From IMG/VR virus record IMGVR_UViG_3300043425_001539, positions 124,001 to 188,000 of that record: 64,000 nt of DNA. The stretch is one strand, 5' to 3'. The first letter of the stretch is position 1. Each line of letters begins with the position of its first letter. Position numbers and translations under genes: made by a program. Below the pieces are notes generated by a model that was given only the letters and a program-made list of their open reading frames with translations, ran no database searches and had not been told where the DNA came from. Shown piece after piece: positions 3,026 through 51,872 of this stretch.

Positions 3026-4587
3026 TGCGGATTGTATATATTACCCAATCTAGCTTTTACTATATCTGGGCCTGTTAAAATATTTTTAGGTAAATTTGAC
3101 GAAACTAAACTTGAATTAGAATTAATGTTGTCTTCGACTGTTTTACCTAAATCGTTGGAAATTAAATTGGGATTATTTAGTTGCAAATCTTCAACCGTAT
3201 TTCCTATATTATTTACAATTAAATTTGAGCCACCTGGGTCTTGTAATGTGTTACCTAAGAAATTCGTTAATAATTCAACTTCTTCACCAGTTAAACCAAC
3301 ATTACCTAAACTATTTGGATTAATGCCGTTTTCGGCTGTAAATTGTTGAAGTACATTTTGAAACGTTGCCAGTGGATTATTTTGTAAACCTTGTAAAGCA
3401 TTAATTGTAGTTGATGCCGAAAACCCGTAAACATTTTCAAGACCAGCCGCTGTAATTATTTTACGAGCAATATTTATCAAAATGTCTTCTGGATCAAGAC
3501 CGCGTAAAGTACGTTCAGGCTTTTTTTGTTCAACCGGAGAAACCGCAGGTTTTGGAGGAAATACTGATTCGCGTGAAACGGTATTTGCTGCACTTGGCTG
3601 TGTTGCGGAAAAATTTTTACCGCCCAATGTTTCGTTGATTGTCCTTGATTGTGTGTTTAAATCTTTTATGTCATAACTATAATCGGCATTATAATAAGAT
3701 TCTTTTAAAACCGCTCCTAATAATCCGTATGAATTAACTTCAGAAATGTATGGTGTATTAATGATAATTTTATTAAGAGCTCTTGATTCAACTATTTTGG
3801 CAACAGATTCTAAATAATTTGGAGATGTTTCAATTATATCAAACGTACACATATCAAATCTAAAGGACAAAAATGTTGTTGTTGACCAAGGAGCTTTTAA
3901 AGATTTTTGAGTGTCAGAAACAACAGCAGAAGGCGAAGCAGCATTTGCAAAAACTCCATTAATATCACTTAAAATTACGCCGGTGTATGTGTTGTCGTTG
4001 TTAACATTAGTCCAATTGCTTAAGGAAGTATGCATAGGTCTTAATTCAGCAACAACAAGTTCCATTGCAAACATTCTTTGGTTTTCAGGTAGTGCATATC
4101 GCATCCATCCTGTATCAAAAACGGCCTTTCTGTAAAGATCCATTAAATATGTAATCTTAAGATCTATTGATTCCTCAGTTTCAAATGTTAATTTTTTATC
4201 TTTACCTCTAAATGAATTGCTAGGATTAATTTTCCAAATGTCTGAAAGACCGGAAACCTTTGTAAAATACCACGGAGCTTCTTTAAGAATTTGTAAAAAA
4301 CCAAGTTTAAATTGCCGTATCATATCAGCTCTTGCCAATTGATTTGTTCTAACAAAATAACTTACCGCTGAATCTGTATCAGTATCAGGCAAAAATAATC
4401 CTTGAGGAAAATAATCTAAATCAAGTTCACCGCTTGACTTTGAAAAATCTTGTGTATTAATTATTCTCCATTGAAATCCCAAGAATGTAGGATCTTGCCA
4501 TTCAAGAGCATATCCGCTTTGTGCTGTAGAAACTCTGGGCTGACCATAAGTTAAAAAATTCTTGGTTATTGAATCCGTGTATTTCAT
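3022..4587 (-). CDS. Putative baseplate/tail structural protein
   Basis: Position within the baseplate operon; no specific motif recognised. Confidence 0.45.
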   Translation of the reverse strand: MKYTDSITKNFLTYGQPRVSTAQSGYALEWQDPTFLGFQWRIINTQDFSKSSGELDLDYFPQGLFLPDTDTDSAVSYFVRTNQLARADMIRQFKLGFLQILKEAPWYFTKVSGLSDIWKINPSNSFRGKDKKLTFETEESIDLKITYLMDLYRKAVFDTGWMRYALPENQRMFAMELVVAELRPMHTSLSNWTNVNNDNTYTGVILSDINGVFANAASPSAVVSDTQKSLKAPWSTTTFLSFRFDMCTFDIIETSPNYLESVAKIVESRALNKIIINTPYISEVNSYGLLGAVLKESYYNADYSYDIKDLNTQSRTINETLGGKNFSATQPSAANTVSRESVFPPKPAVSPVEQKKPERTLRGLDPEDILINIARKIITAAGLENVYGFSASTTINALQGLQNNPLATFQNVLQQFTAENGINPNSLGNVGLTGEEVELLTNFLGNTLQDPGGSNLIVNNIGNTVEDLQLNNPNLISNDLGKTVEDNINSNSSLVSSNLPKNILTGPDIVKARLGNIYNPQ

Positions 4588-4602
4588 ATTAAAATTATAT
4601 AT

Positions 4603-6129
4603 TTAAGGAGCAGGCCACTCTCTTCTTCTAAGAAATAATGTTTGGTAAAAATCAGGCAAATTTGATTTTTTTCTATTTGAAAAAGTTCCAGCTGGCCCTA
4701 TACGATCAAAATTAAATATCATACCGTCCGTCATATAATAACCTGTATAAAATTGATCCACCGCGGCATAACTACTGTTTTCACCGGAATTTGCAACTTC
4801 TCCTGTTGCATTCATTAATCTTTTTTGATCATCAACAATATTTTGCATTAATATCGGAAGTTTTTCTCCATTTGCAATATTTGGATTCCATCGTTGTACA
4901 TCAATCTTTATAAAAAGCTTTGAAAGTTCTTCTCGGTTTCTTTGATTATGTATTTCGGAATAAAGATATTTGTCGTGCACATTTTTAGACTGAACACCTA
5001 ACCACATTTTTTTGTTTTGTGTTTTCCAATACTCGTATTGCGAAGGCGCTCCTATTGCTGTTGTGCCTTCACTTTTAGGGAATGTTCTACCTTTTAAAAT
5101 AATTTTGTTTTCCTCTGCGCCTGTGGTAGTTAATGGATCTATGTATAAATCCCAATATTTTAAACTTTTTTGGTCAAAAAATTGAACATGCGTTTTATAT
5201 CCCCACTTGTTTGCAACATCAGTACTTTGATTAATTATTTGATATTGTTTTATAAAAAAATTGGTATTTTGAAAATCGGACATATTTGTTAGTACCTTAG
5301 GCATATTAACCTGCCCAGCATCTTTGTAAGGTAAATCATCTGGGTAATATGCTTTAACCAATGAATAATCTAAAATAGCAGCGGGTACTTGACTTTCTCC
5401 TTCAAATTGATTATTTATGTTAATAAAATTTAAATGATAATAAATATCAATAAAGACTTTAAAAAAGTCTGATTGTGTTTTCCAAGAATGATCTGCTATA
5501 TGATTAATAAAATTAGACATACTATCTCCTGCGCATATCCAATTCATTGAATCATTTGTTGACGTTTCGTTTGTAGCAAATCCCAAGCCTAAATCTTTTG
5601 CTATATTTTGCAAAACTTCAAATGAACTACCTGTATACTCTTTAACAACTTCATCACGTATTCTAGGTATGAATAGTTCTCCTGATATAGCAACTGGAGC
5701 GCCAAGCCCTTCTTCACCGCCTTTACCTATATCAACTTTAGTAATAACATAATCATTTCTTACAGGCTTAAAAACATCATTTTTTGCTCGTATAAAAACA
5801 TTAATAATATCGCCGTCTTTAGGCATTGCCTGTGATGTAAAAGCGGTTGTACCAACCATGTCAAAAATAACAAAAATTTTAGGCAAAAACCCTGTACAAT
5901 CTATTCTAAAAGTGTCAAGTTCTTGTAAATTAATAACATAGTTGTTAATTGATATTAATGGATATTCTGTTCCTAAATTATTTTGTTCTTGATGACCTGT
6001 CGTTTCTTCTTTTTTGCCTTCAGGCAAATATTCACTTGTTCCTGTAAATACATCAGCAAGCGAAAGTTCATCCAAAACTATTTTTGGTTTAATTAAGGAT
6101 CTAATTATAGTTTTTTCTTCAGATGCCAT
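4603..6129 (-). CDS. Putative baseplate hub protein (gp27-like)
   Basis: SFEVLQNIAKDLGLGF and FYTGYYMTDGM motifs, size, and position between gp53-like and gp5-like genes. Confidence 0.55.
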   Translation of the reverse strand: MASEEKTIIRSLIKPKIVLDELSLADVFTGTSEYLPEGKKEETTGHQEQNNLGTEYPLISINNYVINLQELDTFRIDCTGFLPKIFVIFDMVGTTAFTSQAMPKDGDIINVFIRAKNDVFKPVRNDYVITKVDIGKGGEEGLGAPVAISGELFIPRIRDEVVKEYTGSSFEVLQNIAKDLGLGFATNETSTNDSMNWICAGDSMSNFINHIADHSWKTQSDFFKVFIDIYYHLNFININNQFEGESQVPAAILDYSLVKAYYPDDLPYKDAGQVNMPKVLTNMSDFQNTNFFIKQYQIINQSTDVANKWGYKTHVQFFDQKSLKYWDLYIDPLTTTGAEENKIILKGRTFPKSEGTTAIGAPSQYEYWKTQNKKMWLGVQSKNVHDKYLYSEIHNQRNREELSKLFIKIDVQRWNPNIANGEKLPILMQNIVDDQKRLMNATGEVANSGENSSYAAVDQFYTGYYMTDGMIFNFDRIGPAGTFSNRKKSNLPDFYQTLFLRRREWPAP

Positions 6130-9123: not shown

Positions 9124-9525
9124 ATGTATAAAGTTAAAACCTATGAAGAGTATTTTCCTAAATGGGTTAGCGATTCAACTGAGGATAGGAAAAAAGCTCA
9201 AATGAAAAAGCAAGCAAAAATGGACGATGACGATCCTTCTGCATATAAAAAAATGCCAGGCGACACAAAAGGAAAAGATAAATTAAAAAAATCTAAACAT
9301 ACAGTTAAATACCATGAATTGTATGGGAAGAATAATGAAGAAAAAGAAGGTGGTATGTATTTATCCGCATTGAATAATATTGTTACGCACTCAAGTGAAA
9401 TAATCAATCTTATAGATGAAAATATGGAATTGCCTGCATGGGTTCAGGACAAAATAACATTATCTGAACATAACATGGATGCTGTGTTAAATTTTTTAAA
9501 AACTACTATGAATGATGAAATATAA
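9124..9525 (+). CDS. Hypothetical T4-like internal head protein
   Basis: N-terminal MYKVKTYEEY tag; DDDPSAYKKMPGD..KSKHT and LPAWVQDKIT motifs recalled from T4-like phage proteins. Confidence 0.5.
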   Translation: MYKVKTYEEYFPKWVSDSTEDRKKAQMKKQAKMDDDDPSAYKKMPGDTKGKDKLKKSKHTVKYHELYGKNNEEKEGGMYLSALNNIVTHSSEIINLIDENMELPAWVQDKITLSEHNMDAVLNFLKTTMNDEI

Positions 9526-12888: not shown

Positions 12889-13417
12889 TGCGTTTATTTT
12901 TTGTGGTTTTAACTTTTTTATCAAATGCTTTTTGCGCAATTTGTTCAGCAATCTTTTCTTTAATTGCGTCAGTCTGAATTGATGATGCTAAAAATTTTAG
13001 AATTTGTTCTTCTCCATTATCATAAGATGCTGATAAAACTTTCATTAATTCAACAGAAGGCAGATTAACATCAACTTCAATTGTGAATTTTTCTTTGGTT
13101 TTTTTGCTACTATGCAAAAGCTGTTCAAGCGGAGATAGCGCAACTTCTTTACTTGCTGTTATATCAGGCAAGTTATTTTTTTGAACCGCTTTTTTAACTT
13201 CTTTAACAGGTTGCGGCATTAAATCGGATAAAAACATTGCCTCATTTTCACTTGGAATTTCGATCAAATACTCATTGATAAGTAAAGTATTAATCATACT
13301 GCCATCATTAAAAACTAAGTACTCGATATTATCTTCTTTCCAAATTTCCCCCGAAGATTTAACTATTGTTCCAACTTTGTCACCTTTAGTCCATTGATAA
13401 ATTTGTTCTTTTGTCAT
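12863..13417 (-). CDS. Hypothetical protein
   Basis: Likely start MTKEQIYQW at 13417; the longer upstream extension overlaps the neighbouring gene. Confidence 0.6.
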   Translation of the reverse strand: MTKEQIYQWTKGDKVGTIVKSSGEIWKEDNIEYLVFNDGSMINTLLINEYLIEIPSENEAMFLSDLMPQPVKEVKKAVQKNNLPDITASKEVALSPLEQLLHSSKKTKEKFTIEVDVNLPSVELMKVLSASYDNGEEQILKFLASSIQTDAIKEKIAEQIAQKAFDKKVKTTKNKRNERLQSTV

Positions 13418-40248: not shown

Positions 40249-41430
40249 TTACCATCCTTTTTTGATACAATCTACAATATATTCACGCTCTTCGTTTGTA
40301 ACCCACCATCCAACTGGTATTGACACAATTTTAGGAATTGTATTATCCAATACGGGTAAATGCGAAATATAATCTCTAACCGCAGTATGTTTATCATTTC
40401 GCTCGTGAACTTGTGAAACTACAATATTGCATTCTTTCATCCATTTATAAAAACCGTCTCTGTCTTCAACCAACATACTGTATATCCAAAATGCTGATTC
40501 ATGGTCAGGATTTCTTTCCAACAAAGTAAGGCCATTGCTACCTGCTAAATTACGATCATAATAAGCGGCGTTTTCCTGGTGTCTTTTGATAATTTTTTCG
40601 GAATGTTTTAAGTTTTCCATTCCAACAGTTGCGCACACATCATTCATATGAAATTTAAAACCCCATTCAATAATATCTGCTTCACATCTGAAATCTTTGC
40701 GGTTTCCTTCGCGGTCAATTCCATACCAACGTATTAATTTTCCTCTGTCATGCAATTCTTTGTGTGGAGACAATAATAGACCGCCATCAATTGAAGTTAT
40801 ATGTTTAATTGCTTGCAGTGAATACATGGTTAAATTTCCATGCGTTCCGATATGTTTACCTTTATACTTTGACCCAAAAGAATGCGCGCCATCTTCGATA
40901 ACAGCAGGCTTAAAGCCGTACATTTGATATGCCTTGTTTTGTATCTGTTTAATTTTATCAAGATCAATAGGATATCCACCCCAATGTACAGCCATTATCA
41001 CTTTTGTTTTTGGAGTAATTTTTCTAGCTAAATCATCCAAATCCATGTTTAATGTATTGGGATCAATGTCAACCCATTTGATTTTTAAACCATTTGCTAA
41101 TATAGGCCAGTTACTTGCAGTGCATGTCATTGCTGTTGTTAACACCTCATCACCCGGTTCTAATCCGGGCCAATTATATTCTACATTTGCAACTCCGTGA
41201 TACATTTTTTGGGAAATTTCAGGCTTTTTAAGCATGTGTAGTGCCATGTGTAATGCTGAAGTTCCTGCATTTAATGTTAGTACATAATCATGGTTAAAAT
41301 ATTCTTTAAGTTGTTTTTCAAATTCATCAACTTTAGGGCCTTGACCAATATAACCACTGTTTAATACCTTTCCTACTTCTTCAGCGGCAGTAGGCGCCAT
41401 AAAAACTTTGAATAGTTGAATAGTTTCCAT
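40249..41430 (-). CDS. DegT/DnrJ/EryC1/StrS sugar aminotransferase
   Basis: GTSALH, AVHWGG, IEDGAHSFG and SLQAIKHITSIDGG motifs. Confidence 0.9.
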   Translation of the reverse strand: METIQLFKVFMAPTAAEEVGKVLNSGYIGQGPKVDEFEKQLKEYFNHDYVLTLNAGTSALHMALHMLKKPEISQKMYHGVANVEYNWPGLEPGDEVLTTAMTCTASNWPILANGLKIKWVDIDPNTLNMDLDDLARKITPKTKVIMAVHWGGYPIDLDKIKQIQNKAYQMYGFKPAVIEDGAHSFGSKYKGKHIGTHGNLTMYSLQAIKHITSIDGGLLLSPHKELHDRGKLIRWYGIDREGNRKDFRCEADIIEWGFKFHMNDVCATVGMENLKHSEKIIKRHQENAAYYDRNLAGSNGLTLLERNPDHESAFWIYSMLVEDRDGFYKWMKECNIVVSQVHERNDKHTAVRDYISHLPVLDNTIPKIVSIPVGWWVTNEEREYIVDCIKKGW

Positions 41431-43839: not shown

Positions 43840-44387
43840 TAGATTAAGTGTTCTATAAATTTTTTATTGCCTCCTCTATACCAGTGATATAGATATAAAC
43901 CTCTTATTAAATAAAATTTTAATTGGTGCTTTTGTAATTTCCAATGCAAATCATTATCCACGCCAAGCATACCTTCAGCTTTAAATCCGCCGATTGTTTT
44001 CCAGGTGCTTTTTTTAATTAAAATTAAAAAGCCACTCATAACAGCATTTTTTGGCTTATTTGTTACATCAATAACCGATGAATCATAAATAACTTTCATT
44101 TTTTCACCAAAATCTCTATGATATTTTATGTTATCATTAAAAATATCAACACCAGGCGCAATTTGCCATTCGCATCCTACTCTGTTTGTAAATCCCGTAA
44201 AACAAGAAGCGTCGGGATTTTCCATTAAAGCTTTTTCTATGATTAATCCATAATCAGGTGTTGTGAAAATTGTATCACCGTCAACTATACAAGCCCAATC
44301 ATCATCATTCGGCAAAATTTCCATGAAAGAATTATAATACTGGCCTATATTTTTATTTGCATCAAAAGGGATTGTATAATATATCAT
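43839..44387 (-). CDS. GT2-like glycosyltransferase
   Basis: WACIVDGD, SGFLILIKKSTW..IGGF and GVDND motifs. Confidence 0.7.
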   Translation of the reverse strand: MIYYTIPFDANKNIGQYYNSFMEILPNDDDWACIVDGDTIFTTPDYGLIIEKALMENPDASCFTGFTNRVGCEWQIAPGVDIFNDNIKYHRDFGEKMKVIYDSSVIDVTNKPKNAVMSGFLILIKKSTWKTIGGFKAEGMLGVDNDLHWKLQKHQLKFYLIRGLYLYHWYRGGNKKFIEHLI

Positions 44388-45445
44388 ATTGGTTTTCCGT
44401 TTATAAAGTTTTGCAACTGTCCGTAATCTTTTCTAATTTTTACTTTTTTTGCAATGCTTGAATTGTGTGTCCAAAGCCAAAAGTAATCTGAGCAAATAAT
44501 ATTAGAGTTTAATGGTTTAATATTAATTGGGTACTTCCATAATACATAGTTAAAAGATATCTGATCTCTTTTGGAATATTTTAAAACTTGTTCCCACCAC
44601 ATATTACATAAAAATCGAACTTCTTTAACGTTTTTTCGATAAATAATACCTGTTTGGACCATTCCCCAATTTTCAGGATATCCTTCATTCTTATATATTT
44701 CTGTTTGTTTAATTAAGATTTTTTCATCATCTTTTTTAAATTTAATACAAGCATCTCTTTCCTGGTAAACACAAATTCTGTCAGGGTGCGCAGAAACTGC
44801 AAAAATGTCTTGAGGAGTCAAAAATTTTTGCATAAATTGTTGCGGAGAATTAATAATTTCTACAGTACCATCAATCCATATAGAAGTTTCATATTCAGGT
44901 AAAAATAAATGAGGTAAAATTTTTAACGCTCTTGCTCTTTTTGTTTGATCCAAAAAATTTAAAATTTTAGGTATTTCTCTTATTTCCCATTTTTTATATC
45001 TGCCTGGTCTAATAAGATTGGTAAAACAAATATAATCCCAAGAATCGTCATAATTGCCTATATCTTTAAGATTATCATAATCACCCGAAATACATGTGTA
45101 TATTACTTTTTTATTTTTGGTTTCAATAAATTCATTTGCTTCTATATTTTGATAAAAAAATTCGATTGATTCATTGGCTTTTTCAGGTCTATGTACAGTA
45201 ATTGCTTCTACAGAAAATTCGTCAATTTTATATTGTAGTCCTGTTTTTCTACCTTGCTTAAGCCAATGTCTTAAAGCTAAAAATTCATTATTAATGTTTT
45301 TAGCTTTTAATTGCGAATTAATAAAAATATAATCTTGCCAGTCAAAATCTTCGGGTACATGCGGATGATTTCTTAATCGTTCAAGTTGCTTTGTTGTCGC
45401 GTCTTCGCGTAGCCTCTCAAATTTTTCATTTCTTGGGTCCTTCAC
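44384..45445 (-). CDS. DUF616 (TOD1/MUCI70-like) glycosyltransferase with N-terminal FDW..Y repeat
   Basis: IYTCISGDYD, KILPHLFLP..SIWIDG, HPDRICVYQE and RDQISFNY; GTG start. Confidence 0.75.
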   Translation of the reverse strand: MKDPRNEKFERLREDATTKQLERLRNHPHVPEDFDWQDYIFINSQLKAKNINNEFLALRHWLKQGRKTGLQYKIDEFSVEAITVHRPEKANESIEFFYQNIEANEFIETKNKKVIYTCISGDYDNLKDIGNYDDSWDYICFTNLIRPGRYKKWEIREIPKILNFLDQTKRARALKILPHLFLPEYETSIWIDGTVEIINSPQQFMQKFLTPQDIFAVSAHPDRICVYQERDACIKFKKDDEKILIKQTEIYKNEGYPENWGMVQTGIIYRKNVKEVRFLCNMWWEQVLKYSKRDQISFNYVLWKYPINIKPLNSNIICSDYFWLWTHNSSIAKKVKIRKDYGQLQNFINGKPI

Positions 45446-45473: not shown

Positions 45474-45505
45474 AAAAAAGGAAAGGTACACTTAAGTACC
45501 TTTCC
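45474..45505 (-). terminator. Intrinsic terminator ending the Ro60 transcript
   Basis: ggaaaggtac-acttaa-gtacctttcc hairpin followed by a U-tract on the minus strand. Confidence 0.8.
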
Positions 45506-45528
45506 TATATTAATTAAAAAAACAACAA

Positions 45529-47154
45529 CTATTTATTTTCAATTTCATCCCACGCTTTTATAATTGCGTCAGCATATTGTGCCTCTTTACCTGTCCATCC
45601 TGTTAAAATTGCTCCGCGATATAATGTTTCAGGCAAAACAGAATTTGTATATCCGCCCACCTGAACAGAAAACACATTTACCTTTGGATTTACAGTTTTA
45701 CGATATTGTCGAATAACAGCAAGAACGTCGAGATATGATGAATAATTTGAAGATCTGTAAGTAAACTCTTTAGGTAATTCATCATGCCCAAACAATTCGC
45801 CTCGGCCAGCCTGCATATCTGAATAAATAAAAACTGTGTCATAATGAATTTTTTCGTTTAGTGCAGCATTCCAAAATAACCAAAGACCATTTTCGGTGTT
45901 AGATCCTGTTCTTTTACCTTTCTCTGTAATGTCTGTAAGTTGACTTAATATTCCGTTTCTTTTGGAAATAGGTGTCATTGTTAATCTGTCGCCAAAAACT
46001 CCAACCTCTCCATTGTCAGCTTGTTTTGCAGTTATAACTGAAGACAAATTAGCAATATCAGCAATAGTAATTTTCCCATATTCCGAATTAAATGTGCCCC
46101 AGGCAGAACCAGAATTGTCTGATAAGCATGCAACCTTGCCTTTTAATTTAGGCATATTTGCAACTGAAATATCAATACACTCTTCAAGAGCATCAAGAAT
46201 TTGCTGCTTATAAGGAATGTCAGTGCTTTTAATAATGTTAAAAGCAGTATAATACCTAAATGGGAATTGCTTTCCTTGTAAAACTCCTGCTTTTAATTGC
46301 TCAAGAATTTGTGTTGCTTGATCTTGTGATAATTCAGATTTTGAAAAAATTCCGCGCAAATTCCTCAACAAGGCCATATGAGGAACTTTAATTGTATTCA
46401 AAATTTCCACCCATGTCTTGCCACTTGATTTTAACATTTCCCAAGTTTGCTCAGTTTCTTTTATCGCAACGGTACCTGTACGCATCAATTCATTGATAGT
46501 TTCATTGTTTGCGTGAGATAACCTTACCAAGTCAATTAGCCTTTTTCCTTTATACTTATTAATTTGATATCTAGACATTGATTCTAAAGAATCAGCCCAA
46601 GACCTCTTAAGAATTGAAGGTAAACCTTTTTTAGACCCGTTTAAATACATATAATATTCAAATTGGTTAGTTATGTCGTCAGGACGCGGTGTAATTTCTT
46701 TAGCAAAAGCGCGCATATAACCTGGATTTTTGGCATTAAATTCCACCCGATTTTTGTGACGAATTGCTCTAACATAAATAACCGCGGGATTCAAGCGCAT
46801 TAAGTATTCATTACGTAATTCCTTGGCAAACTCCAAGGTTCCTAAATAATCATAATCCAATGCGTTGTCAATTACTCGCTCAAACACTTGCCCAGCATCT
46901 TCATTTGGGGATATCAAGTCAGCAAAAATAAAATCCGCAGATAATTTCGAAGGATATTCAACCTTGATACCTTTTCTATAGTACTGCGGTTCGCCAAAAA
47001 TTGAGCTCGTTGCAACCATTTTGAGTGTTTGCAAAGGGTTAACTTTAAATGAAGTACCGCCCATAAAGTTTTGTTCAGCTTGCGCTTCATACATAGAGAT
47101 TTCTGCTTTTCTTTGAACGACTTCCTTGGATGCTGATGAGCTTAATCTTGACAT
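45529..47154 (-). CDS. rsr: Ro60 / TROVE domain RNA-binding protein with vWA domain
   Basis: FGEPQYY, LRNEYLMRLNP, YQINKY, MALLRNLR and KQFPFRYYTA; MIDAS DNSGSA and IYSDMQ. Confidence 0.9.
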   Translation of the reverse strand: MSRLSSSASKEVVQRKAEISMYEAQAEQNFMGGTSFKVNPLQTLKMVATSSIFGEPQYYRKGIKVEYPSKLSADFIFADLISPNEDAGQVFERVIDNALDYDYLGTLEFAKELRNEYLMRLNPAVIYVRAIRHKNRVEFNAKNPGYMRAFAKEITPRPDDITNQFEYYMYLNGSKKGLPSILKRSWADSLESMSRYQINKYKGKRLIDLVRLSHANNETINELMRTGTVAIKETEQTWEMLKSSGKTWVEILNTIKVPHMALLRNLRGIFSKSELSQDQATQILEQLKAGVLQGKQFPFRYYTAFNIIKSTDIPYKQQILDALEECIDISVANMPKLKGKVACLSDNSGSAWGTFNSEYGKITIADIANLSSVITAKQADNGEVGVFGDRLTMTPISKRNGILSQLTDITEKGKRTGSNTENGLWLFWNAALNEKIHYDTVFIYSDMQAGRGELFGHDELPKEFTYRSSNYSSYLDVLAVIRQYRKTVNPKVNVFSVQVGGYTNSVLPETLYRGAILTGWTGKEAQYADAIIKAWDEIENK

Positions 47155-47180
47155 AATAAAAATTGGTTTAATAAGTTAAA

Positions 47181-47262
47181 AAATCGAGAATATCAAAAAG
47201 AGTTTTTAATAAAGTATCATTTACAAATTGATTTTGAAGTAACTCTTTTTCCGCTTCGATTT
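47181..47262 (-). ncRNA. Y RNA-like element 1
   Basis: AAAUCGA-AGCGG-AAAAAGAGUU-ACUUCAA...AACUCUUUUU-GAUAUUC-UCGAUUU. Terminal stem plus inner stem; ends 26 nt upstream of the Ro60 ATG. Confidence 0.7.
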
Positions 47263-47263
47263 G

Positions 47264-47336
47264 AGCAACAAGCGAGACTCGAACTCGCAACATTTAGTTT
47301 GGAAAACTAACACTCTACCAATTGAGCTATTGTTGC
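47264..47336 (-). tRNA. tRNA-Gly(TCC)
   Basis: Cloverleaf: GCAACAA/TTGTTGC acceptor, TTAGT-TTTCCAA-ACTAA anticodon arm, TTCGAGT T-loop; no encoded CCA. Confidence 0.9.
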
Positions 47337-47341
47337 TTATT

Positions 47342-47426
47342 TTTTCTTGAGAAAATTATTAAAGGTGTTGGTGTGTGAAAATTCTAAAACAATTTTGAAG
47401 TAACCTTTAATACCGCTTCAAGAAAA
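47342..47426 (-). ncRNA. Y RNA-like element 2
   Basis: UUUUCUUGA-AGCGG-UAUUAAAGGU-UACUUCAA...ACCUUUAAUA-AUUUUC-UCAAGAAAA. Same architecture as element 1 with compensatory stem changes. Confidence 0.7.
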
Positions 47427-47431
47427 TATTT

Positions 47432-47482
47432 TTTTTAAAGAACGTTTGTAGATATAATATACAAGTAATGATAAATAGTTTT
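47432..47482 (-). promoter_or_regulatory. Promoter and leader duplicated upstream of both RNA transcription units
   Basis: ttttttaaagaacgtttgtagatata...ataaatagtttt is near-identical to 50241-50292 and contains the AAAAC-N15-GTAT motif. Confidence 0.7.
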
Positions 47483-47507
47483 TGTGATTTGATATTTTTT
47501 TTTAAAT

Positions 47508-48254
47508 TTAATCAAACGGCAAAGAAACTCCTCTTTTTCCAACAACGGCACAAGATAAAAAGTTTGCAAAACTTATTGAAGCGTTCAAATCCTTTGTTTC
47601 TAAATAAGTAATACCAAAAGCCGCAACAAAAGTATCTCCTGCACCACTTACATCAATGGTTTCTTTTGGATTTTTAAGAGCGAATGTTTTGTTGTTTATC
47701 ATCGCTCCTCTTGCGCCCAGTGTAACAATAATATTACTTTTATCAGAAATATGCAAATTGTTTGACATTTCGCTTTCGTTTAACTTAATAAATGTAAATT
47801 CTTTAACAATTTCATCAGTTAAAATTTTCTTGGAATCCAACAAAGTTAATTTGCCATTTTTTGCTATTTTTAATAAATCATCATGCCCTAAAAAACCTTT
47901 GTTATAATCACTTACAATTACTAAATCCGCTTCTTTAATCTCTTTTATATTTTCTTCTGTGATGTTAATTTTTCCAACTGGTTGCAATTCTCCGTCATCA
48001 ATTCTAACAATCATTTGGTTTGACTTTTCATCAACAATCCTTGTTTTTTTAATCAATTCTTTCTGATGCCAAAATGTTATACTTGTCTCGGGATTTATTG
48101 ATTTAATGTTTTCTACAACATTTCCTGCCATTCCAGGGTTTTGTGTAGTTTTAATTGGATTAAAAACTGGAACAGGCGCTTCAGGACACAGCCTAACAGT
48201 TTTTCCATAAATAAATTCATCAGTACAAAGTTCACCTATAACTATTACTTTCAT
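47508..48254 (-). CDS. rfaE1: Heptose-7-phosphate kinase-like PfkB protein (HldE/RfaE domain I)
   Basis: RLCPEAPVPV, GMAGNV, IVSDYNKG, VTLGARGA and DVSGAGDTF motifs. Confidence 0.85.
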   Translation of the reverse strand: MKVIVIGELCTDEFIYGKTVRLCPEAPVPVFNPIKTTQNPGMAGNVVENIKSINPETSITFWHQKELIKKTRIVDEKSNQMIVRIDDGELQPVGKINITEENIKEIKEADLVIVSDYNKGFLGHDDLLKIAKNGKLTLLDSKKILTDEIVKEFTFIKLNESEMSNNLHISDKSNIIVTLGARGAMINNKTFALKNPKETIDVSGAGDTFVAAFGITYLETKDLNASISFANFLSCAVVGKRGVSLPFD

Positions 48255-48720
48255 AATTTAAAATTTTTGTTGTTGAATATTTTTCAATTCTTGGAAAAAA
48301 AATTAGTTCTTTAGCATATTCACTTCCTATAACTCCATTTTTGCGATACTCTTCTCCTACTATTAAATAATCAGGGTTTAATCTTTTAATTGCATTTTTA
48401 AGTTCTTCTGAGTCATCAAAAACAATAATGTTTGATACATAAACTATCGAGCTTAACATCTCAATTCTATCTTTTAAAGAATTATACGGTCGCAATTCGC
48501 CTTTTAACTCTTTAATTCTACGATCTGTGTCAATTCCTACTGTTACTTCCCCGTATGAATAAGCATATTTAAGTAAACGAATATGACCGTTGTGTAACAC
48601 ATCAAAAGTACCGTTAACCCAAACCTTTTTATTTAATTTACTATAATGATTTGGCGCAGGAAGACTGGAATAAAAATCCCAGTCTTCATCATCAAGAAAT
48701 TTAGTGGTTTCTTTATTCAT
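48232..48720 (-). CDS. rfaE2: Heptose-1-phosphate adenylyltransferase-like protein (RfaE domain II / cytidylyltransferase)
   Basis: VNGTFDVLHNGH, VGIDTD..LKGELRP and YSTTKI; start reassigned to MNKETT. Confidence 0.85.
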   Translation of the reverse strand: MNKETTKFLDDEDWDFYSSLPAPNHYSKLNKKVWVNGTFDVLHNGHIRLLKYAYSYGEVTVGIDTDRRIKELKGELRPYNSLKDRIEMLSSIVYVSNIIVFDDSEELKNAIKRLNPDYLIVGEEYRKNGVIGSEYAKELIFFPRIEKYSTTKILNYESNSYR

Positions 48721-48725
48721 GTGTA

Positions 48726-49112
48726 CTACTTTTGCGAATCGCCAGCCCAAACTCGGTAACTGTCTTCATCAAAGTGTTGTGTTGATACTTCAAAAACAAT
48801 GCCATCTGTAAGAGCTTCAAGTTGATGCGGTTGTCCTGGATATTGTCGAACAGAGTCTCCTTCTCTTAATGTTATTTCATTGACTTTTGCGGTTTGCGTA
48901 TCTATCCAACGATAAATAAATTCGCCTTCTTTAACATACCAAGTTTCATCTTTAAGCATGTGATAATGCATTGAAAATTTTGCGCCTGCTTTAAAACACA
49001 AAAGTTTTCCGCAATAAAATTCATTATTTTCAAATACAATCTCATGTCCCCATCCTTTAGGAACATTGCATTCTTTGCACTCCTTTGCATTGAATATGTT
49101 TGGTTTTTTCAT
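48726..49112 (-). CDS. Cupin (mannose-6-phosphate isomerase-like)
   Basis: KGWGHE, FSMHYHMLKDETWYV, PH.L and EVST..F.EDSYR motifs. Confidence 0.8.
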   Translation of the reverse strand: MKKPNIFNAKECKECNVPKGWGHEIVFENNEFYCGKLLCFKAGAKFSMHYHMLKDETWYVKEGEFIYRWIDTQTAKVNEITLREGDSVRQYPGQPHQLEALTDGIVFEVSTQHFDEDSYRVWAGDSQK

Positions 49113-49141
49113 AAAAATATATTTGATTTATATATTCAGAG

Positions 49142-49212
49142 CAGAAGCATTAGGATTCGAACCTAAAATAACGCTTTTGGAGAGCGCCATGATACCTTTT
49201 CACCATACTCCT
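49142..49212 (-). tRNA. tRNA-Trp(CCA)
   Basis: AGGAGTA/TGCTTCT acceptor, GCGCT-CTCCAAA-AGCGT anticodon arm, TTCGAAT T-loop, G73. Confidence 0.88.
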
Positions 49213-49216
49213 GTAT

Positions 49217-49390
49217 TTATTCACAGTATTTATTTTTTCTGCACTTGTATTTATTCTCTTCTTTCTTTTTATCTTTAAATACTTTAGGGGCAAACCTTCC
49301 ATCATAGAATCCTTGTTCCTGGGCATTTTTTCTTTGTTTACCCATTTCAATTTTCCTAAGTTGTTCTGAAGTTATCACAAATTTTTTCAT
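49217..49390 (-). CDS. Small basic protein, candidate ArfA-like ribosome rescue factor (57 aa, not in ORF track)
   Basis: MKKFVITSEQLRKIEMGKQRKNAQEQGFYDGRFAPKVFKDKKKEENKYKCRKNKYCE. It exactly fills the gap between tRNA-Gln and tRNA-Trp and has an AT-rich start context. The ArfA likeness is inference. Confidence 0.55.
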   Translation of the reverse strand: MKKFVITSEQLRKIEMGKQRKNAQEQGFYDGRFAPKVFKDKKKEENKYKCRKNKYCE

Positions 49391-49412
49391 ATTAAAATTT
49401 TTAAATTGTGAG

Positions 49413-49483
49413 TTATCTGATCTGGGCTCGAACCAGAAATTTAGGACTCAAAAACCTACGTGATACCATTTCACTATCAGACA
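49413..49483 (-). tRNA. tRNA-Gln(TTG)
   Basis: TGTCTGA/TCAGATA acceptor (U1-A72), TAGGT-TTTTGAG-TCCTA anticodon arm, TTCGAGC T-loop. Confidence 0.85.
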
Positions 49484-49488
49484 ATATG

Positions 49489-49562
49489 TAGGCCTGGCAG
49501 GGTACGATCCTGCAACCCCTGAATTAAAAGTTCAGTGCTCTATCCATTTGAGCTACAAGCCT
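49489..49562 (-). tRNA. tRNA-Lys(TTT)
   Basis: AGGCTTG/CAGGCCT acceptor, CTGAA-CTTTTAA-TTCAG anticodon arm; atypical ATCGTAC T-loop. Confidence 0.88.
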
Positions 49563-49569
49563 ATATTTG

Positions 49570-49641
49570 AGCCTTCTGTCGGACTCGAACCAACATCTTC
49601 TAAATTACAAATTTAAAGCTTTACCATTAAGCTAAGAAGGC
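49570..49641 (-). tRNA. tRNA-Thr(TGT)
   Basis: GCCTTCT/AGAAGGC acceptor, TTAAA-TTTGTAA-TTTAG anticodon arm, TTCGAGT T-loop. Confidence 0.88.
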
Positions 49642-49649
49642 AATTTGTG

Positions 49650-49725
49650 TCCGAGAAGAAGGGTTCGAACCTTCATGATGTCTGGTTCCCAAAACCAGAG
49701 GCTTAGCCAATTAGCCCATTCTCGG
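49650..49725 (-). tRNA. tRNA-Pro(TGG)
   Basis: CCGAGAA/TTCTCGG acceptor, CTGGT-TTTGGGA-ACCAG anticodon arm, TTCGAAC T-loop. Confidence 0.88.
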
Positions 49726-49735
49726 AAATTTGATT

Positions 49736-49777
49736 AAAAACAAAAAGGTCCAGATAATTTAATTACCTGGACCTTTT
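49736..49777 (-). terminator. Intrinsic terminator inside the tRNA operon (attenuator terminator)
   Basis: RNA AAAAGGUCCAGGUAAU-UAA-AUUAUCUGGACCUUUU followed by UGUUUUU. Confidence 0.85.
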
Positions 49778-49799
49778 AAGAATAATAATTACTATTATA

Positions 49800-49919
49800 C
49801 TAAGGTCCAGTATCTGGCCACGTAGACGGTTGTTGAACACAACCAATAACACCAACCGGTGTAGCAACTGTTTTGCTTGTTGCTTTTGAAATTTTAGCTG
49901 ATGTGATTTGTTGTTTCAT
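49800..49919 (-). CDS. Putative attenuator leader peptide (39 aa, not in ORF track)
   Basis: MKQQITSAKISKATSKTVATPVGVIGCVQQPSTWPDTGP*. Its last codons contain CUGGACCUU, complementary to the 5' arm of the downstream terminator. Confidence 0.7.
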   Translation of the reverse strand: MKQQITSAKISKATSKTVATPVGVIGCVQQPSTWPDTGP

Positions 49920-49938
49920 ATTTTTAATTTTAATTTAG

Positions 49939-50010
49939 TGGCGGGGCCGGGAATCGAACCCGAACCTCCAGGTTATGAGCCTGGCGAACTACCGTTATTA
50001 CCACCCCGCA
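49939..50010 (-). tRNA. tRNA-Met(CAT), initiator-like
   Basis: TGCGGGG/CCCCGCC acceptor with a 1:72 mismatch, CCAGG-CTCATAA-CCTGG anticodon arm, TTCGATT T-loop; weak D-stem. Confidence 0.8.
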
Positions 50011-50019
50011 ATGTTTTAG

Positions 50020-50094
50020 AGATCATAGAAAGAATCGAACTTTCGCTTACCGGCGCGGACGCCCTTTCCGGCTTTCTACCAACAGAATATGGTC
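50020..50094 (-). ncRNA. tRNA-like RNA lacking a canonical anticodon loop
   Basis: GACCATA/TATGATC acceptor, TTCT-GTTGGT-AGAA D-arm and GAAAG-TTCGATT-CTTTC T-arm; the anticodon arm GCCGG/CCGGT closes a 14-nt loop. Confidence 0.6.
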
Positions 50095-50116
50095 AATTTT
50101 TACTATTATATATTTT

Positions 50117-50240
50117 TTCTTTTCTTGAGAATTTTAACCAAAGGCGTTAAGAAAGGGGGAAAGCAAATTTCAGTGTTAAAACCTATATTGCTTAGTAGAG
50201 CTATATTGAAGTAACCATCGGTACCGCTTCAAGAAAAGAA
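50117..50240 (-). ncRNA. Y RNA-like element 3 (larger variable domain)
   Basis: UUCUUUUCUUGA-AGCGG-UACCGAUGGU-UACUUCAA...GCCUUUGGU-UAAAAUUC-UCAAGAAAAGAA. Confidence 0.7.
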
Positions 50241-50292
50241 TTTTTTAAAGAACGTTTGTAGATATAATATACACAAGATAATAAATAGTTTT
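50241..50292 (-). promoter_or_regulatory. Promoter and leader of the Y3-tRNA-attenuator unit
   Basis: Duplicate of 47432-47482. Confidence 0.7.
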
Positions 50293-50542: not shown

Positions 50543-51091
50543 TTACCACAATCCATCAGAACTTTTAATATCCTTGACTTTAGACAAATCCCAATCAAAA
50601 TCTGAATGAACTTTAGATTTACTAAATATGCCTTTCATATATCTGACATTTCTAATATCCCAATTTCTTAGATTACCATCAAAAGGAGTATCATAAAACA
50701 TAGATGCCATGTTGGTTACTTTACTAACATTCCACCCGCTAACGTCACCCTTAAAAGGTGTCCCTTCAAACATACCTTCCATGTTGGTTACATTGCTAAC
50801 GTCCCATTCGCTAATGTCACCTTTAAAATCTGACCCATAAAACATGTAGGACATATTTTTTACATTACTAACATTCCATTCGCTAATGTTGCCATTAAAA
50901 GGCATTTCTGCAAATAAGAATGACATGTCTTTAATTCGCGAAACATCAACATGACTTAAATCTGCATTAGGCCCAAATTTAGCTATTTCATTTTCAATTA
51001 TCGACTCTAAAGATTTCCGATCTATTGCATAAATAACTTTGTTTTGAGCAGCTTCGTTAAGAAACTGATCGAAAGATTTTAAATTTTTCAT
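50543..51091 (-). CDS. BspA-type / DUF285 leucine-rich repeat protein with N-terminal tag
   Basis: 24-aa repeats FNGxISxWNVSNVxNMxxMF; N-terminus MKNLKSFDQFLNEA. Confidence 0.85.
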   Translation of the reverse strand: MKNLKSFDQFLNEAAQNKVIYAIDRKSLESIIENEIAKFGPNADLSHVDVSRIKDMSFLFAEMPFNGNISEWNVSNVKNMSYMFYGSDFKGDISEWDVSNVTNMEGMFEGTPFKGDVSGWNVSKVTNMASMFYDTPFDGNLRNWDIRNVRYMKGIFSKSKVHSDFDWDLSKVKDIKSSDGLW

Positions 51092-51095
51092 TTTT

Positions 51096-51872
51096 TTAAA
51101 TTTTTATATGTTTCAGACCATACATTCTATCTACATTATCAGCCTTTGATAAATTCCATTGACTAATATCGCCTTTAAACTTAGAGTCTAAGAACATTAT
51201 AAATACATCTCTGACATTGCTAACGTCCCATTTGCTAATGTCGCCGTTAAATCGAGATTCTGCAAACATGTGCGTCATATCTCTAACTTTGCTAACATTC
51301 CACTTGCTGATGTCACCGTTAAAAGTTGTCTTTTGAAACATGTGCGACATATCAATAACTTTGCTGACATCCCACTTGCTGATGTCGCCATTAAATTTAG
51401 ACCCTTCAAACAATGATGACATCATTTCAACATTACTTACATCCCATTGACTAATGTCGCCGTTAAATTTAGAATATGCAAACATATCAGACATATCACG
51501 TACATTGCTTACATCCCACTTGCTAACATCGCCGTTAAACGAAGAATGACGAAACATTCCCCACACAGTGCGAGCATTACTAACATTCCACTTGCTAACA
51601 TCGCCGTTAAATTTTGAGAATGCAAATGTATCATTAAAATTAGTAACATTGCTTACATCCCACTTGCTAACGTCGCCGTTAAATTTTGTACCTGAAAAAG
51701 CGGCGCTTATATCGGTTAGACCTGAAACATCAATGTGATTTAAGTCAGCATTTGGTCCTAGCAATTGAATTTCTTTTAAAATAATTGGTTTTAATTCTTT
51801 TGCGTTCTTTGGGACAATAATTTCGCGTTCTGCTTCATTAAGAAACTGATCAAATGTTTTTAAATTTTTCAT
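51096..51872 (-). CDS. BspA-type / DUF285 LRR protein with N-terminal tag
   Basis: Tandem 24-aa FNGDVSKWDVSNV repeats; N-terminus MKNLKTFDQFLNEA. Confidence 0.85.
   Translation of the reverse strand: MKNLKTFDQFLNEAEREIIVPKNAKELKPIILKEIQLLGPNADLNHIDVSGLTDISAAFSGTKFNGDVSKWDVSNVTNFNDTFAFSKFNGDVSKWNVSNARTVWGMFRHSSFNGDVSKWDVSNVRDMSDMFAYSKFNGDISQWDVSNVEMMSSLFEGSKFNGDISKWDVSKVIDMSHMFQKTTFNGDISKWNVSKVRDMTHMFAESRFNGDISKWDVSNVRDVFIMFLDSKFKGDISQWNLSKADNVDRMYGLKHIKI

What the first reader, a model, noticed from the sequence alone, without database searches (positions are those of the whole stretch)
45529..50240. Phage Ro60 with three covarying Y-RNA-like elements that lack the YrlA tRNA-like domain
Seen: elements at 47181-47262, 47342-47426 and 50117-50240 share GAAGCGG, GUUACUUCAA and UUCUC. 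Their stems differ in sequence but keep pairing: AAAAAGAGUU/AACUCUUUUU, UAUUAAAGGU/ACCUUUAAUA and ACCGAUGGU/GCCUUUGGU. The distal loops are unrelated and none has a T-arm. Known: Ro60/Rsr binds Y RNAs encoded near its gene through a bulged terminal helix, and bacterial YrlA RNAs carry a tRNA-like domain. Inference: a phage family of Y RNAs with a constant Ro-binding module and three different effector loops, usable as tethers or guides in RNA quality control or anti-defence.
Basis: partly seen in the sequence, partly recalled or inferred. Interest (0 to 1): 0.8.

Follow-up and report, generated by a model that had tools for sequence, protein, structure and literature searches.

The report
Short Y RNAs beside phage Ro60
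Three small structured RNA genes next to a phage copy of the Ro60 RNA-binding protein are real members of a widespread Y-RNA family that has the Ro60-docking stem of bacterial YrlA RNAs but not their tRNA-like part; this extends a known system and is not a new one.

Summary
All three elements lie on the minus strand at the stated coordinates and share GAAGCGG, UUACUUCA and UUCUC around two helices that differ in sequence.

- **Structure.** A covariance model built from relatives finds only these three copies in the window. Across 92 relatives, all 18 base pairs show compensatory changes.
- **Protein.** The 541-aa ORF has a Ro60 fold: the top 13 PDB matches are all Ro60 proteins.
- **Linkage.** In 80 bacterial TROVE loci, 61 of 62 matches lie on the TROVE strand, mostly within 1 kb upstream. 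About 860 kb of control viral DNA without TROVE genes gave none.
- **Family.** The same stem module encloses a canonical YrlA tRNA-like domain in Bacillus phage G and several MAG (metagenome-assembled genome) loci. The window's elements are therefore YrlA-lineage stems without the tRNA module. That short form makes up 83 of 92 detected members.
A real tRNA-Gly sits exactly between elements 2 and 1. A degenerate tRNA-like sequence follows element 3. Elements 2 and 3 share a duplicated upstream block. The family also occurs in bacteria.
- **Novelty.** Y RNAs without a tRNA domain (YrlB, Yrn2, phiLo Yrl1/2) and phage Y RNAs are already known, so novelty is moderate.

Ro60 binding and RNA expression remain untested.

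The parts
45529..47154 (-). Ro60/TROVE protein gene (541 aa), with a C-terminal vWA domain carrying a DNSGS MIDAS motif
   Evidence: Pfam TROVE 34.6 bits against a cut-off of 23. phmmer to phiLo Ro60 (9kop/9l5y), E 1e-11, with DNSGS aligned to the MIDAS site. AF2 model pLDDT 75; the top 13 Foldseek PDB hits are all Ro60/Rsr. 49% identical to Bacillus phage G gp540.
45479..45506 (-). Terminator-like hairpin followed by a U-run, just after the Ro60 ORF
   Evidence: Consensus scan only.
47181..47262 (-). el1: short Y RNA. Outer stem AAAUCGA/UCGAUUU, AGCGG loop, 9-bp inner stem, UACUUCA, 3' loop GAUAUUC. A U-run follows. It ends 26 nt before the Ro60 ATG.
   Evidence: R1 58.3 bits.
47263..47336 (-). 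tRNA-Gly(UCC), directly abutting el1 (0 nt) and 5 nt after el2
   Evidence: Rfam tRNA 71.8 bits. ARAGORN.
47342..47426 (-). el2: short Y RNA. 9-bp outer stem, AGCGG, 10-bp inner stem, UACUUCA, 3' loop AUUUUC.
   Evidence: R1 65.8 bits.
47427..47482 (-). Upstream block shared almost identically with the el3 upstream region. It contains ACGTTCTTTAA, which is invariant in relatives. Probably a promoter or leader.
   Evidence: Alignments A1 and A8. Its function is inferred.
50117..50240 (-). el3: longer Y RNA. 12-bp outer stem, AGCGG, inner stem with one mismatch, UACUUCA, ~68-nt apical loop, 3' loop AAAAUUC.
   Evidence: R1 55.3 bits.
50241..50292 (-). Duplicate of the el2 upstream block. A sigma-70-like -10 (TATATT) ends at 50266.
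50020..50094 (-). Degenerate tRNA-like sequence between el3 and tRNA-Met. The T-arm is intact, the D-arm is weak, and the anticodon-arm loop is oversized.
   Evidence: Rfam tRNA 23 bits, below the gathering score of 29. ARAGORN does not call it.
49141..50010 (-). tRNA array downstream of el3 on the same strand: Met, Pro, Thr, Lys, Gln, Trp

Best explanation
The three elements are genes for small non-coding Y RNAs, the partner RNAs of the phage's Ro60 protein. They belong to a divergent branch of the YrlA lineage in which most copies keep only the Ro60-docking stem and have no tRNA-like module.

Likely mechanism (inferred unless marked as shown):
1. They are transcribed on the minus strand from two near-identical upstream blocks, together with tRNAs and the Ro60 gene.
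2. tRNA processing cuts them out. RNase P at the tRNA-Gly 5' end would make the el2 3' end. 3' trimming of tRNA-Gly would make the el1 5' end. The adjacency is shown; the processing is inferred.
3. Each RNA folds into a stem - internal loop - stem (shown by covariation).
4. Ro60 recognises the invariant part: GA/UC closing pairs, the AGCGG // A(A/U)UAUUC internal loop, and UACUUCA. UACUUCA sits one helical turn away, across an inner stem of fixed 9-10 bp length.
5. The variable apical loops are then free to gate Ro60's cavity or to recruit other factors such as host PNPase, as shown for other Y RNAs.
For: - **Structure.** In 30 distinct sequences, 18/18 pairs have double-sided changes and 84.7% of cells are paired, against 59% when shuffled and 36-49% when slid. 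In 92 sequences, 88.4% are paired against 54.7%, and the covariation score is 0.818 against 0.215.
- **Protein.** Ro60 fold.
- **Linkage.** The true members found by a motif-only scan of IMG/VR (L106, L079, L068, L111, L076) all sit beside a TROVE gene; L112, another locus from that scan, also has one plus an R1 match. In 80 genome TROVE loci there are 62 R1 hits at E<0.01 in 43 loci. Of these, 61 are on the TROVE strand, about 50 lie within 1 kb upstream and 8 lie just downstream. In the 100-locus control, R1 hit only 5 loci, 4 of them with TROVE. The other 95 loci (~860 kb) gave none.
- **Same module in YrlA-type RNAs.** It flanks a T-arm / hairpin / D-arm domain in phage G L118:1782-1939 and in L029:1957-2106, which give sub-threshold Rfam YrlA hits of 36.2 and 30.6 bits. 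It does the same in L137, L203, L144, L151 and L166.
- **Known binding motif.** The 5' strand carries (C/U)GAAG. Many relatives read GUCCGAAGCGG. This matches the published Ro60-contact motifs GNCGAAN0-1G and GGUCCGA (PMC4201824).
- **Breadth.** The module persists next to a TROVE protein only 22% identical to the window's (L085).
- **Precedent.** Phage phiLo Ro60 binds two phage-encoded stem-bulge-stem Yrl RNAs and forms a complex with host PNPase (PMC12135203).
Against: - There is no direct evidence of expression or of discrete RNA ends. No RNA run was listed for the element region. The one metatranscriptome that held part of the wider stretch has only two contigs, both inside the Ro60 ORF.
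- Binding to Ro60 is untested.
- el2 and el3 read UUGAAG, not the published CGAA core.
- The Rfam YrlA and Y_RNA models do not score the elements.
- R1 finds no member near the Ro60 genes of phiLo, Listeria phage P100 or crAss-like phages, so the module is not universal among phage Ro60 loci.
Confidence: 0.78

Rival explanations
1. The elements act in cis and are not free RNAs. They would be leader or attenuator structures through which Ro60 or another factor controls read-through into the Ro60 gene and the tRNA operons.
For: el1 ends 26 nt before the Ro60 start codon and is followed by a U-run. In relatives the proximal copy is followed by a terminator-like hairpin before the ORF. Most copies lie upstream on the same strand.
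Against: Copies also lie downstream of TROVE genes (L131, L171, L181, L183, L198). Others lie kilobases away inside tRNA arrays (el3; L118:9364; L029). Arrays of 3-7 paralogs with different loops, some with full tRNA-like domains, fit trans-acting RNAs better. The two roles do not exclude each other.
Confidence: 0.1
2. They are spacer or processing hairpins of phage tRNA operons and have no functional link to Ro60.
For: tRNAs directly abut elements in the window. The same is seen in L029, where tRNA-Gly 1879-1951, the Y element 1957-2106 and the next tRNA at 2113 follow each other, and where an element at 4572-4661 is followed by a tRNA at 4665.
Against: Most phage tRNA arrays lack them, for example P100. 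Many members sit beside TROVE genes with no tRNA nearby, for example L135 in a Flavobacterium chromosome. The invariant internal-loop motifs overlap the known Ro60-binding motif.
Confidence: 0.06
3. They are selfish DNA repeats (REP- or MITE-like palindromes) that happen to cluster here.
For: Multiple copies, and an upstream block that is duplicated almost identically.
Against: Compensatory changes preserve pairing while the sequence diverges. Orientation relative to TROVE is fixed in 61 of 62 cases. Conserved unpaired motifs and a fixed inner-stem length point to selection at the RNA level.
Confidence: 0.02

Closest known systems
YrlA (Rfam RF02553; Chen et al. 2014, PMC4201824)
   Same: Encoded next to Ro60 on the same strand. 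The 5' and 3' ends pair into stem 1 - internal loop - stem 2. The 5' strand carries a CGAA(N)G-type motif (Rfam consensus CgaAUGC; here GA(A/U)GCGG). Family members in phage G, L029 and several MAG loci carry the YrlA T-arm / hairpin / D-arm domain in the same stem module.
   Different: The window's three copies have no tRNA-like domain. They do not score against RF02553 at all, and even the tRNA-bearing relatives stay below its gathering score (30-36 bits against 69). This clade adds the invariant motifs GCGG, UACUUCA and A(A/U)UAUUC and a fixed 10-bp inner stem.
YrlB (Salmonella, M. smegmatis) and Yrn2 (D. radiodurans): second, shorter Y RNAs
   Same: Ro60-associated hairpin RNAs encoded beside a YrlA/Yrn1-type RNA. 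They carry the Ro-binding motif but lack a full tRNA-like module, and are processed from a common precursor in M. smegmatis (PMC4201824).
   Different: Those are described as long hairpins with small pyrimidine-rich loops, and Salmonella YrlB had orthologs only within Salmonella. Here the short form is a large conserved family, with loops that are variable and often A-rich at the 3' side. Sequence homology to YrlB/Yrn2 could not be tested because the sequences were not at hand.
Yrl1/Yrl2 of Thermus phage phiLo (PMC12135203; PDB 9L5Y)
   Same: Phage-encoded stem-bulge-stem RNAs just upstream of a phage Ro60 gene. The published description mentions no tRNA-like domain (0 occurrences of 'tRNA-like'). 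They are shown to bind phage Ro60 and to form complexes with host PNPase. The phiLo protein is the closest solved structure to the window's protein.
   Different: R1 gives no significant match in the phiLo locus. The proteins are about 20% identical.
Metazoan Y RNAs (Rfam RF00019)
   Same: Terminal stem with a conserved Ro60-binding 5' strand (GGUCCGA; relatives here read GUCCGAAG), an internal loop, an upper stem and a variable loop. Several paralogs per genome.
   Different: No Rfam hit. No bulged-C helix is evident. Transcription is bacterial or phage and tRNA-linked, not Pol III.

Membership tests
Y RNA (Ro60-associated ncRNA, general) | Encoded close to a Ro60/TROVE gene, usually on the same strand | tested here: met
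   el1 is 26 nt, el2 188 nt and el3 about 3 kb upstream of the Ro60 ORF, all on the minus strand. Family-wide, 61 of 62 hits are on the TROVE strand. The control loci without TROVE gave none.
Y RNA (Ro60-associated ncRNA, general) | The 5' and 3' ends pair into a long stem interrupted by a bulge or internal loop | tested here: met
   Both helices are supported by covariation.
Y RNA (Ro60-associated ncRNA, general) | Conserved Ro60-contact motif on the 5' strand (GGUCCGA in metazoa; GNCGAAN0-1G in bacteria) | tested here: inconclusive
   el1 reads AUCGAAG. el2 and el3 read CUUGAAG, with U in place of C at a position that is base-paired and covaries. Relatives read (G)UCCGAAG. The core GAAG is present; the full motif is not.
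Y RNA (Ro60-associated ncRNA, general) | Physically bound by Ro60 and stabilised by it | not testable with these tools
   Needs RIP, EMSA or a Ro60 deletion.
Y RNA (Ro60-associated ncRNA, general) | Accumulates as a discrete small RNA | tested here: inconclusive
   No RNA run was listed for the element region. The only metatranscriptome with any signal covers two pieces of the ORF.
YrlA (RF02553) | tRNA-like effector module (T-arm, acceptor-like hairpin, D-arm) in the apical region | tested here: not met
   No tRNA or YrlA hit on the elements, and only tRNAs in the window reach Rfam gathering scores. Family-wide, 83 of 92 members have neither a T-arm nor a D-arm motif. The module is present in sister copies elsewhere.
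YrlA (RF02553) | Score at or above the Rfam gathering threshold (69 bits) | tested here: not met
   No hit at E <= 10 on the elements.
YrlB / Yrn2-type short Y RNAs | Ro-binding motif in a terminal stem, no complete tRNA-like domain, encoded beside Ro60 with other Y RNAs | tested here: met
   These are architectural criteria only.
YrlB / Yrn2-type short Y RNAs | Sequence homology to YrlB or Yrn2 | not tested

The most novel reading that the evidence does not exclude
The GA-AGCGG / UACUUCA / AUAUUC-UC stem may be a portable Ro60-docking scaffold into which phages and bacteria place interchangeable cargo. The cargo would range from nothing, through unrelated loops, a conserved ~60-nt module in relatives and permuted tRNA-like domains, to a whole non-permuted tRNA (L151:3287-3421). 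In jumbo phages, arrays of such RNAs interleaved with tRNAs would then program Ro60 for several different tasks during infection, such as hijacking host PNPase or shielding or repairing phage tRNAs against host anticodon nucleases.
Probability: 0.15. Interest if true: 0.75.

Novelty: new variant of a known kind. Interest (0 to 1): 0.45.

Why it matters
- **A gap in detection.** A large clade of Ro60 loci in phages, Bacteroidota, Bacillota and Synergistota has Y RNAs that the current Rfam YrlA model does not detect. In this clade the form without a tRNA domain is the commonest one detected.
- **Testable motifs.** The clade has sharply defined invariant motifs (GCGG, UACUUCA, AUAUUC) and a fixed 10-bp spacer. 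These are ready-made mutational targets for working out how bacterial and phage Ro60 recognises its RNA.
- **A usable model system.** The family includes a cultivable system, Bacillus phage G, with seven copies, one of them YrlA-type.
- **Biogenesis.** The tRNA-flanked arrangement suggests a simple route to the mature RNAs.
- **Limit.** It does not change the concept of Y RNAs.

Tried and rejected
- **GAAG/CUUC pseudoknot.** I considered pairing between GAAG of GAAGCGG and CUUC of UACUUCA. Rejected: UACAUCA and GAUGCGG/GACGCGG variants are not compensated.
- **Rfam.** Searches at the gathering threshold and at E <= 10 found nothing on the elements. A YrlA 'hit' at 49506-49619 is just tRNAs.
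- **A fourth copy at 13123-13186 (+).** A loose regex picked it up. Rejected: 7/9 inner pairs, no UUC-UC, and no R1 hit.
- **el3 loop versus the long insert.** I tested whether the el3 loop is homologous to the ~170-nt insert of the promoter-proximal elements in relatives. The alignment shows no convincing similarity.
- **RNA-seq evidence.** No RNA run was listed for the small-RNA region. One metatranscriptome has two contigs inside the ORF only. DNA runs show a few variants but nothing informative.
- **Other phage Ro60 loci.** R1 found no members in Thermus phage phiLo, Nitratidesulfovibrio phage SRB7757, crAss-like cr111_1 and csAssE-Sib, or Listeria phage P100.
- **Supplementary tables of Chen et al. 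2014.** They are not held, so I could not confirm which phage G coordinates were reported.
- **Wide-gap motif scan of IMG/VR.** It returned mostly chance hits, which were filtered by stem complementarity.
Full report
**1. What is in the sequence**

All features lie on the minus strand. Reading 5'->3' on that strand:
- a ~52-nt upstream block (50292->50241);
- el3 (50240->50117);
- a degenerate tRNA-like sequence (50094->50020; Rfam tRNA 23 bits, below the gathering score of 29);
- tRNA-Met;
- a small ORF and a terminator-like hairpin;
- tRNAs Pro, Thr, Lys, Gln and Trp;
- three sugar-nucleotide-type genes: a cupin, a cytidylyltransferase and a PfkB kinase;
- a near-identical copy of the upstream block (47482->47427);
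- el2 (47426->47342), then 5 nt;
- tRNA-Gly(UCC) (47336->47263), then 0 nt;
- el1 (47262->47181), a U-run, then 26 nt;
- the 541-aa TROVE ORF (47154->45529);
- a terminator-like hairpin.

The motif GAAGCGG-N9-10-UUACUUCAA occurs three times against 0 expected.

**2. The protein is a Ro60**

- Pfam TROVE scores above its cut-off.
- phmmer finds the Thermus phage phiLo Ro60 structures at E 1e-11, and a DNSGS MIDAS motif aligns.
- An AlphaFold2 model (pLDDT 75, pTM 0.71) has as its top 13 PDB matches only Ro60 proteins, over the full length: phiLo, Xenopus, human, and D. radiodurans Rsr.
- The closest annotated relative is Bacillus phage G gp540, at 49% identity.

**3. The elements are a real, structured RNA family**

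A motif-only scan of IMG/VR returned mostly chance hits. After filtering for stem complementarity, true relatives remained. A protein-guided scan added 13 viral loci.

About thirty distinct elements showed one architecture:
- a variable outer stem closing in GA/UC;
- a 5' loop (A/U)GCGG;
- a 10-bp variable inner stem;
- UAC(U/A)UCA;
- a variable loop, often A-rich at its 3' end;
- a 3' loop A(A/U)UAUUC.

A covariance model, R1, was built from 19 short members. It recovers the three window elements at 55-66 bits and nothing else in the window, even with filters off.

| Alignment | Cells paired | Shuffled | Slid registers | Double-sided changes | Covariation score |
|---|---|---|---|---|---|
| 30 distinct sequences | 84.7% | 59% | 36-49% | 18/18 pairs | 0.656 vs 0.215 |
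| 92 sequences | 88.4% | 54.7% | 36-46% | 18/18 pairs | 0.818 vs 0.215 |

These alignments were fitted to the model, which favours the model's structure. The slid-register controls and the number of pair types argue that the signal is real.

GCGG, U-A-C-N-U-C and the C before the closing UC are invariant. The GA/UC closing pairs do covary in rare members (L131), so they are true pairs.

**4. Association with TROVE genes**

- *From RNA to protein.* The true members from the motif-only scan (L106, L079, L068, L111, L076) sit next to a TROVE gene. L029 is the exception: it is a 7.7-kb contig made of tRNA genes. L112, from the same scan, also has a TROVE gene and an R1 match.
- *From protein to RNA.* In 80 TROVE loci from bacterial genome contigs, R1 gives 62 hits at E<0.01 in 43 loci. 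Of these, 61 are on the TROVE strand, about 50 lie within 1 kb upstream and 8 lie just downstream.
- *Control.* Among 100 viral loci (912 kb) selected only for containing the 16-nt motif, R1 hits just five loci, four of which carry a TROVE gene. The remaining 95 loci (~860 kb) have none.
- *Distant protein.* One of the five, L085, has a TROVE protein only 22% identical to the window's, a GC content above 50%, and four to five copies upstream. The RNA module is therefore older than this protein sub-clade.
- *Not phage-only.* The family is found in contigs labelled Crocinitomicaceae, Saprospiraceae, Ruminococcus, Lachnospiraceae and Synergistaceae, and in isolates. The isolates are Bacillus sp. 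Brlt_9 and Flavobacterium sp. 9AF. In the Flavobacterium the neighbours are ordinary cellular genes.

**5. Relation to YrlA**

In Bacillus phage G the 1-kb unannotated gap upstream of gp540 holds five family members. A sixth lies in the downstream tRNA cluster.

A seventh, L118:1782-1939, carries the same CUGAAGCGG...UUACUUCG...AAUAAUCUCAG stem. This stem encloses a T-arm, a hairpin and a D-arm, which is the YrlA arrangement. Rfam YrlA hits it at 36.2 bits, below the threshold of 69.

The same is true of L029:1957-2106 (30.6 bits) and of L137, L203, L144, L151 and L166. None of 16 genome loci reaches the Rfam gathering score.

The Rfam consensus reads stem - CgaAUGCu - stem - CUA. This maps one-to-one onto stem - GA(A/U)GCGG - stem - UUACUUC.

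Many relatives read GUCCGAAGCGG. That matches the published Ro60-contact motifs GNCGAAN0-1G (bacteria) and GGUCCGA (Xenopus) (PMC4201824; bioRxiv 10.1101/312249).

I therefore place the family in the YrlA lineage. Of 92 detected members, 83 have neither a T-arm nor a D-arm motif (median length 82 nt), 6 have both and 3 have a T-arm only. The model was built from short members and penalises long inserts, so these proportions are biased toward the short form.

**6. How it probably works**

*Shown:* the structure, the conservation pattern, the genomic linkage, and the adjacency to tRNAs.

*Inferred:*
- The RNAs are co-transcribed with tRNAs and released by tRNA processing. el2 ends 5 nt before tRNA-Gly, and el1 starts at the nucleotide after it. 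In L029, tRNAs flank elements at spacings of 4-7 nt. In M. smegmatis, YrlA and YrlB come from one precursor and YrlA is an RNase P substrate (PMC4201824).
- Ro60 binds the invariant internal loop and UACUUCA. The fixed 10-bp spacing would put both on one face of the helix.
- The free loops gate or tether, as in the D. radiodurans Ro60 - Y RNA - PNPase complex and the phiLo Ro60 - Yrl - PNPase complex (PMC12135203).

Nothing here shows what the individual loops do.

**7. Comparison and novelty**

- Phage Y RNAs were already reported: 22 phages in PMC4201824, and phage G is named in PMC12135203 when citing that work.
- Y RNAs without a tRNA domain are known (YrlB, Yrn2, phiLo Yrl1/2).
- Abundant small RNAs upstream of an Rsr-like gene near tRNAs have been seen in Listeria phage CKA15 (PMC12282133). 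Its relative P100 has no R1 member.

What I did not find described in the literature searched:
- this clade's invariant motifs;
- the predominance and multiplicity of the short form;
- its invisibility to Rfam;
- the tRNA-punctuated layout.

I rate it a new variant of a known kind, of moderate interest.

**8. Limits**

- There are no expression or binding data.
- MAG contigs may be mis-binned phage DNA.
- The rest of the ~238-kb phage genome was not examined, so a YrlA-type copy elsewhere in this phage cannot be excluded.

Noticed in passing
window 50020-50094 (-): A degenerate tRNA-like sequence lies between el3 and tRNA-Met. Its T-arm is intact (GAAAG-UUCGAUU-CUUUC), the acceptor has one mismatch, the D-arm is weak, and the 'anticodon' loop has 14 nt. 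Rfam tRNA scores 23 bits against a gathering score of 29, and ARAGORN does not call it. It could be a decaying tRNA, or a tRNA-like module placed beside the Y stem instead of inside it.
   Followed up: partly
window 47427-47482 and 50241-50292 (-); L121:4445-4541 and relatives: The sequence upstream of el2 and el3 is nearly identical. It contains ACGTTCTTTAA, which is invariant 10-20 nt before the first Y element in phages whose Ro60 is only 57-62% identical (A8). The relatives also show a Bacteroidetes-type -7 box (TATATTTG). It is more conserved than a promoter needs to be; its function is unknown.
   Followed up: partly
L121:4542-4758, L122:834-1054, L123:4534-4764, L124:4531-4762, L129:4534-4762, L079:3322-3547(-), L106:5430-5644(-): In the closest relatives the promoter-proximal Y element carries a ~170-nt insert. 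Its 3' ~60 nt are highly conserved (GGUUUAAUUCAC..GACUAGAAAU..GGAAYGAUUACCUC..GAGGGACC), and its hairpins covary. It gives no tRNA or Rfam match. It may be a different, uncharacterised 'effector' module.
   Followed up: partly
L151:3287-3421: A Y stem of this family encloses a complete, non-permuted tRNA-like sequence. ARAGORN calls it tRNA-Leu(UAG), 75 nt; Rfam tRNA scores 50 bits. A YrlA-type copy with the permuted T-arm...D-arm order sits 70 nt downstream (3493-3628). This may be a snapshot of how YrlA tRNA-like domains arise.
   Followed up: partly
L118 (Bacillus phage G, NC_023719) 1782-1939, 3259-3343, 3459-3544, 3566-3668, 3690-3763, 3795-3938, 9364-9430: Phage G has seven family members. 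Five fill the 1-kb unannotated gap upstream of gp540 (TROVE), and one lies in the tRNA/tmRNA cluster. The record annotates none of them.
   Followed up: yes
window 47263-47336; L029:1879-1951; L118:9150-9221: tRNA-Gly(UCC) is repeatedly the tRNA next to a Y element: in the window, in L029, and (140 nt away) in phage G. This could be coincidence or a conserved linkage.
   Followed up: no
window 47508-49112 (-), 44384-45445 (-), 40249-41430 (-): Between the two Y/tRNA clusters lie a PfkB-family kinase, a cytidylyltransferase-like protein and a cupin, resembling a split HldE-type sugar-nucleotide pathway. A TOD1/MUCI70-like glycosyltransferase and an aminotransferase lie downstream. This suggests a phage glycan-modification cluster. 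Listeria phage P100 also has a phosphoheptose isomerase near its Rsr-like gene.
   Followed up: no
window 50543-51872 (-): Two adjacent DUF285 repeat proteins (182 and 258 aa).
   Followed up: no
window 50231: A DNA run from a subsurface metagenome (X4) carries A>G here. On the RNA strand this changes el3's CUUGAAGCGG to CUCGAAGCGG. That creates the CGAAG core but leaves a C-A mismatch, unless the partner base also differs (none was listed).
   Followed up: no
L217 (Listeria phage P100) 36571-44373: The P100 Rsr-like 'RNA-binding protein' gp165 sits beside the tRNA array, with RtcB-like and RNA-ligase genes downstream. It has no member of this RNA family, so the abundant small RNAs reported for the related phage CKA15 must be of another kind.
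   Followed up: partly
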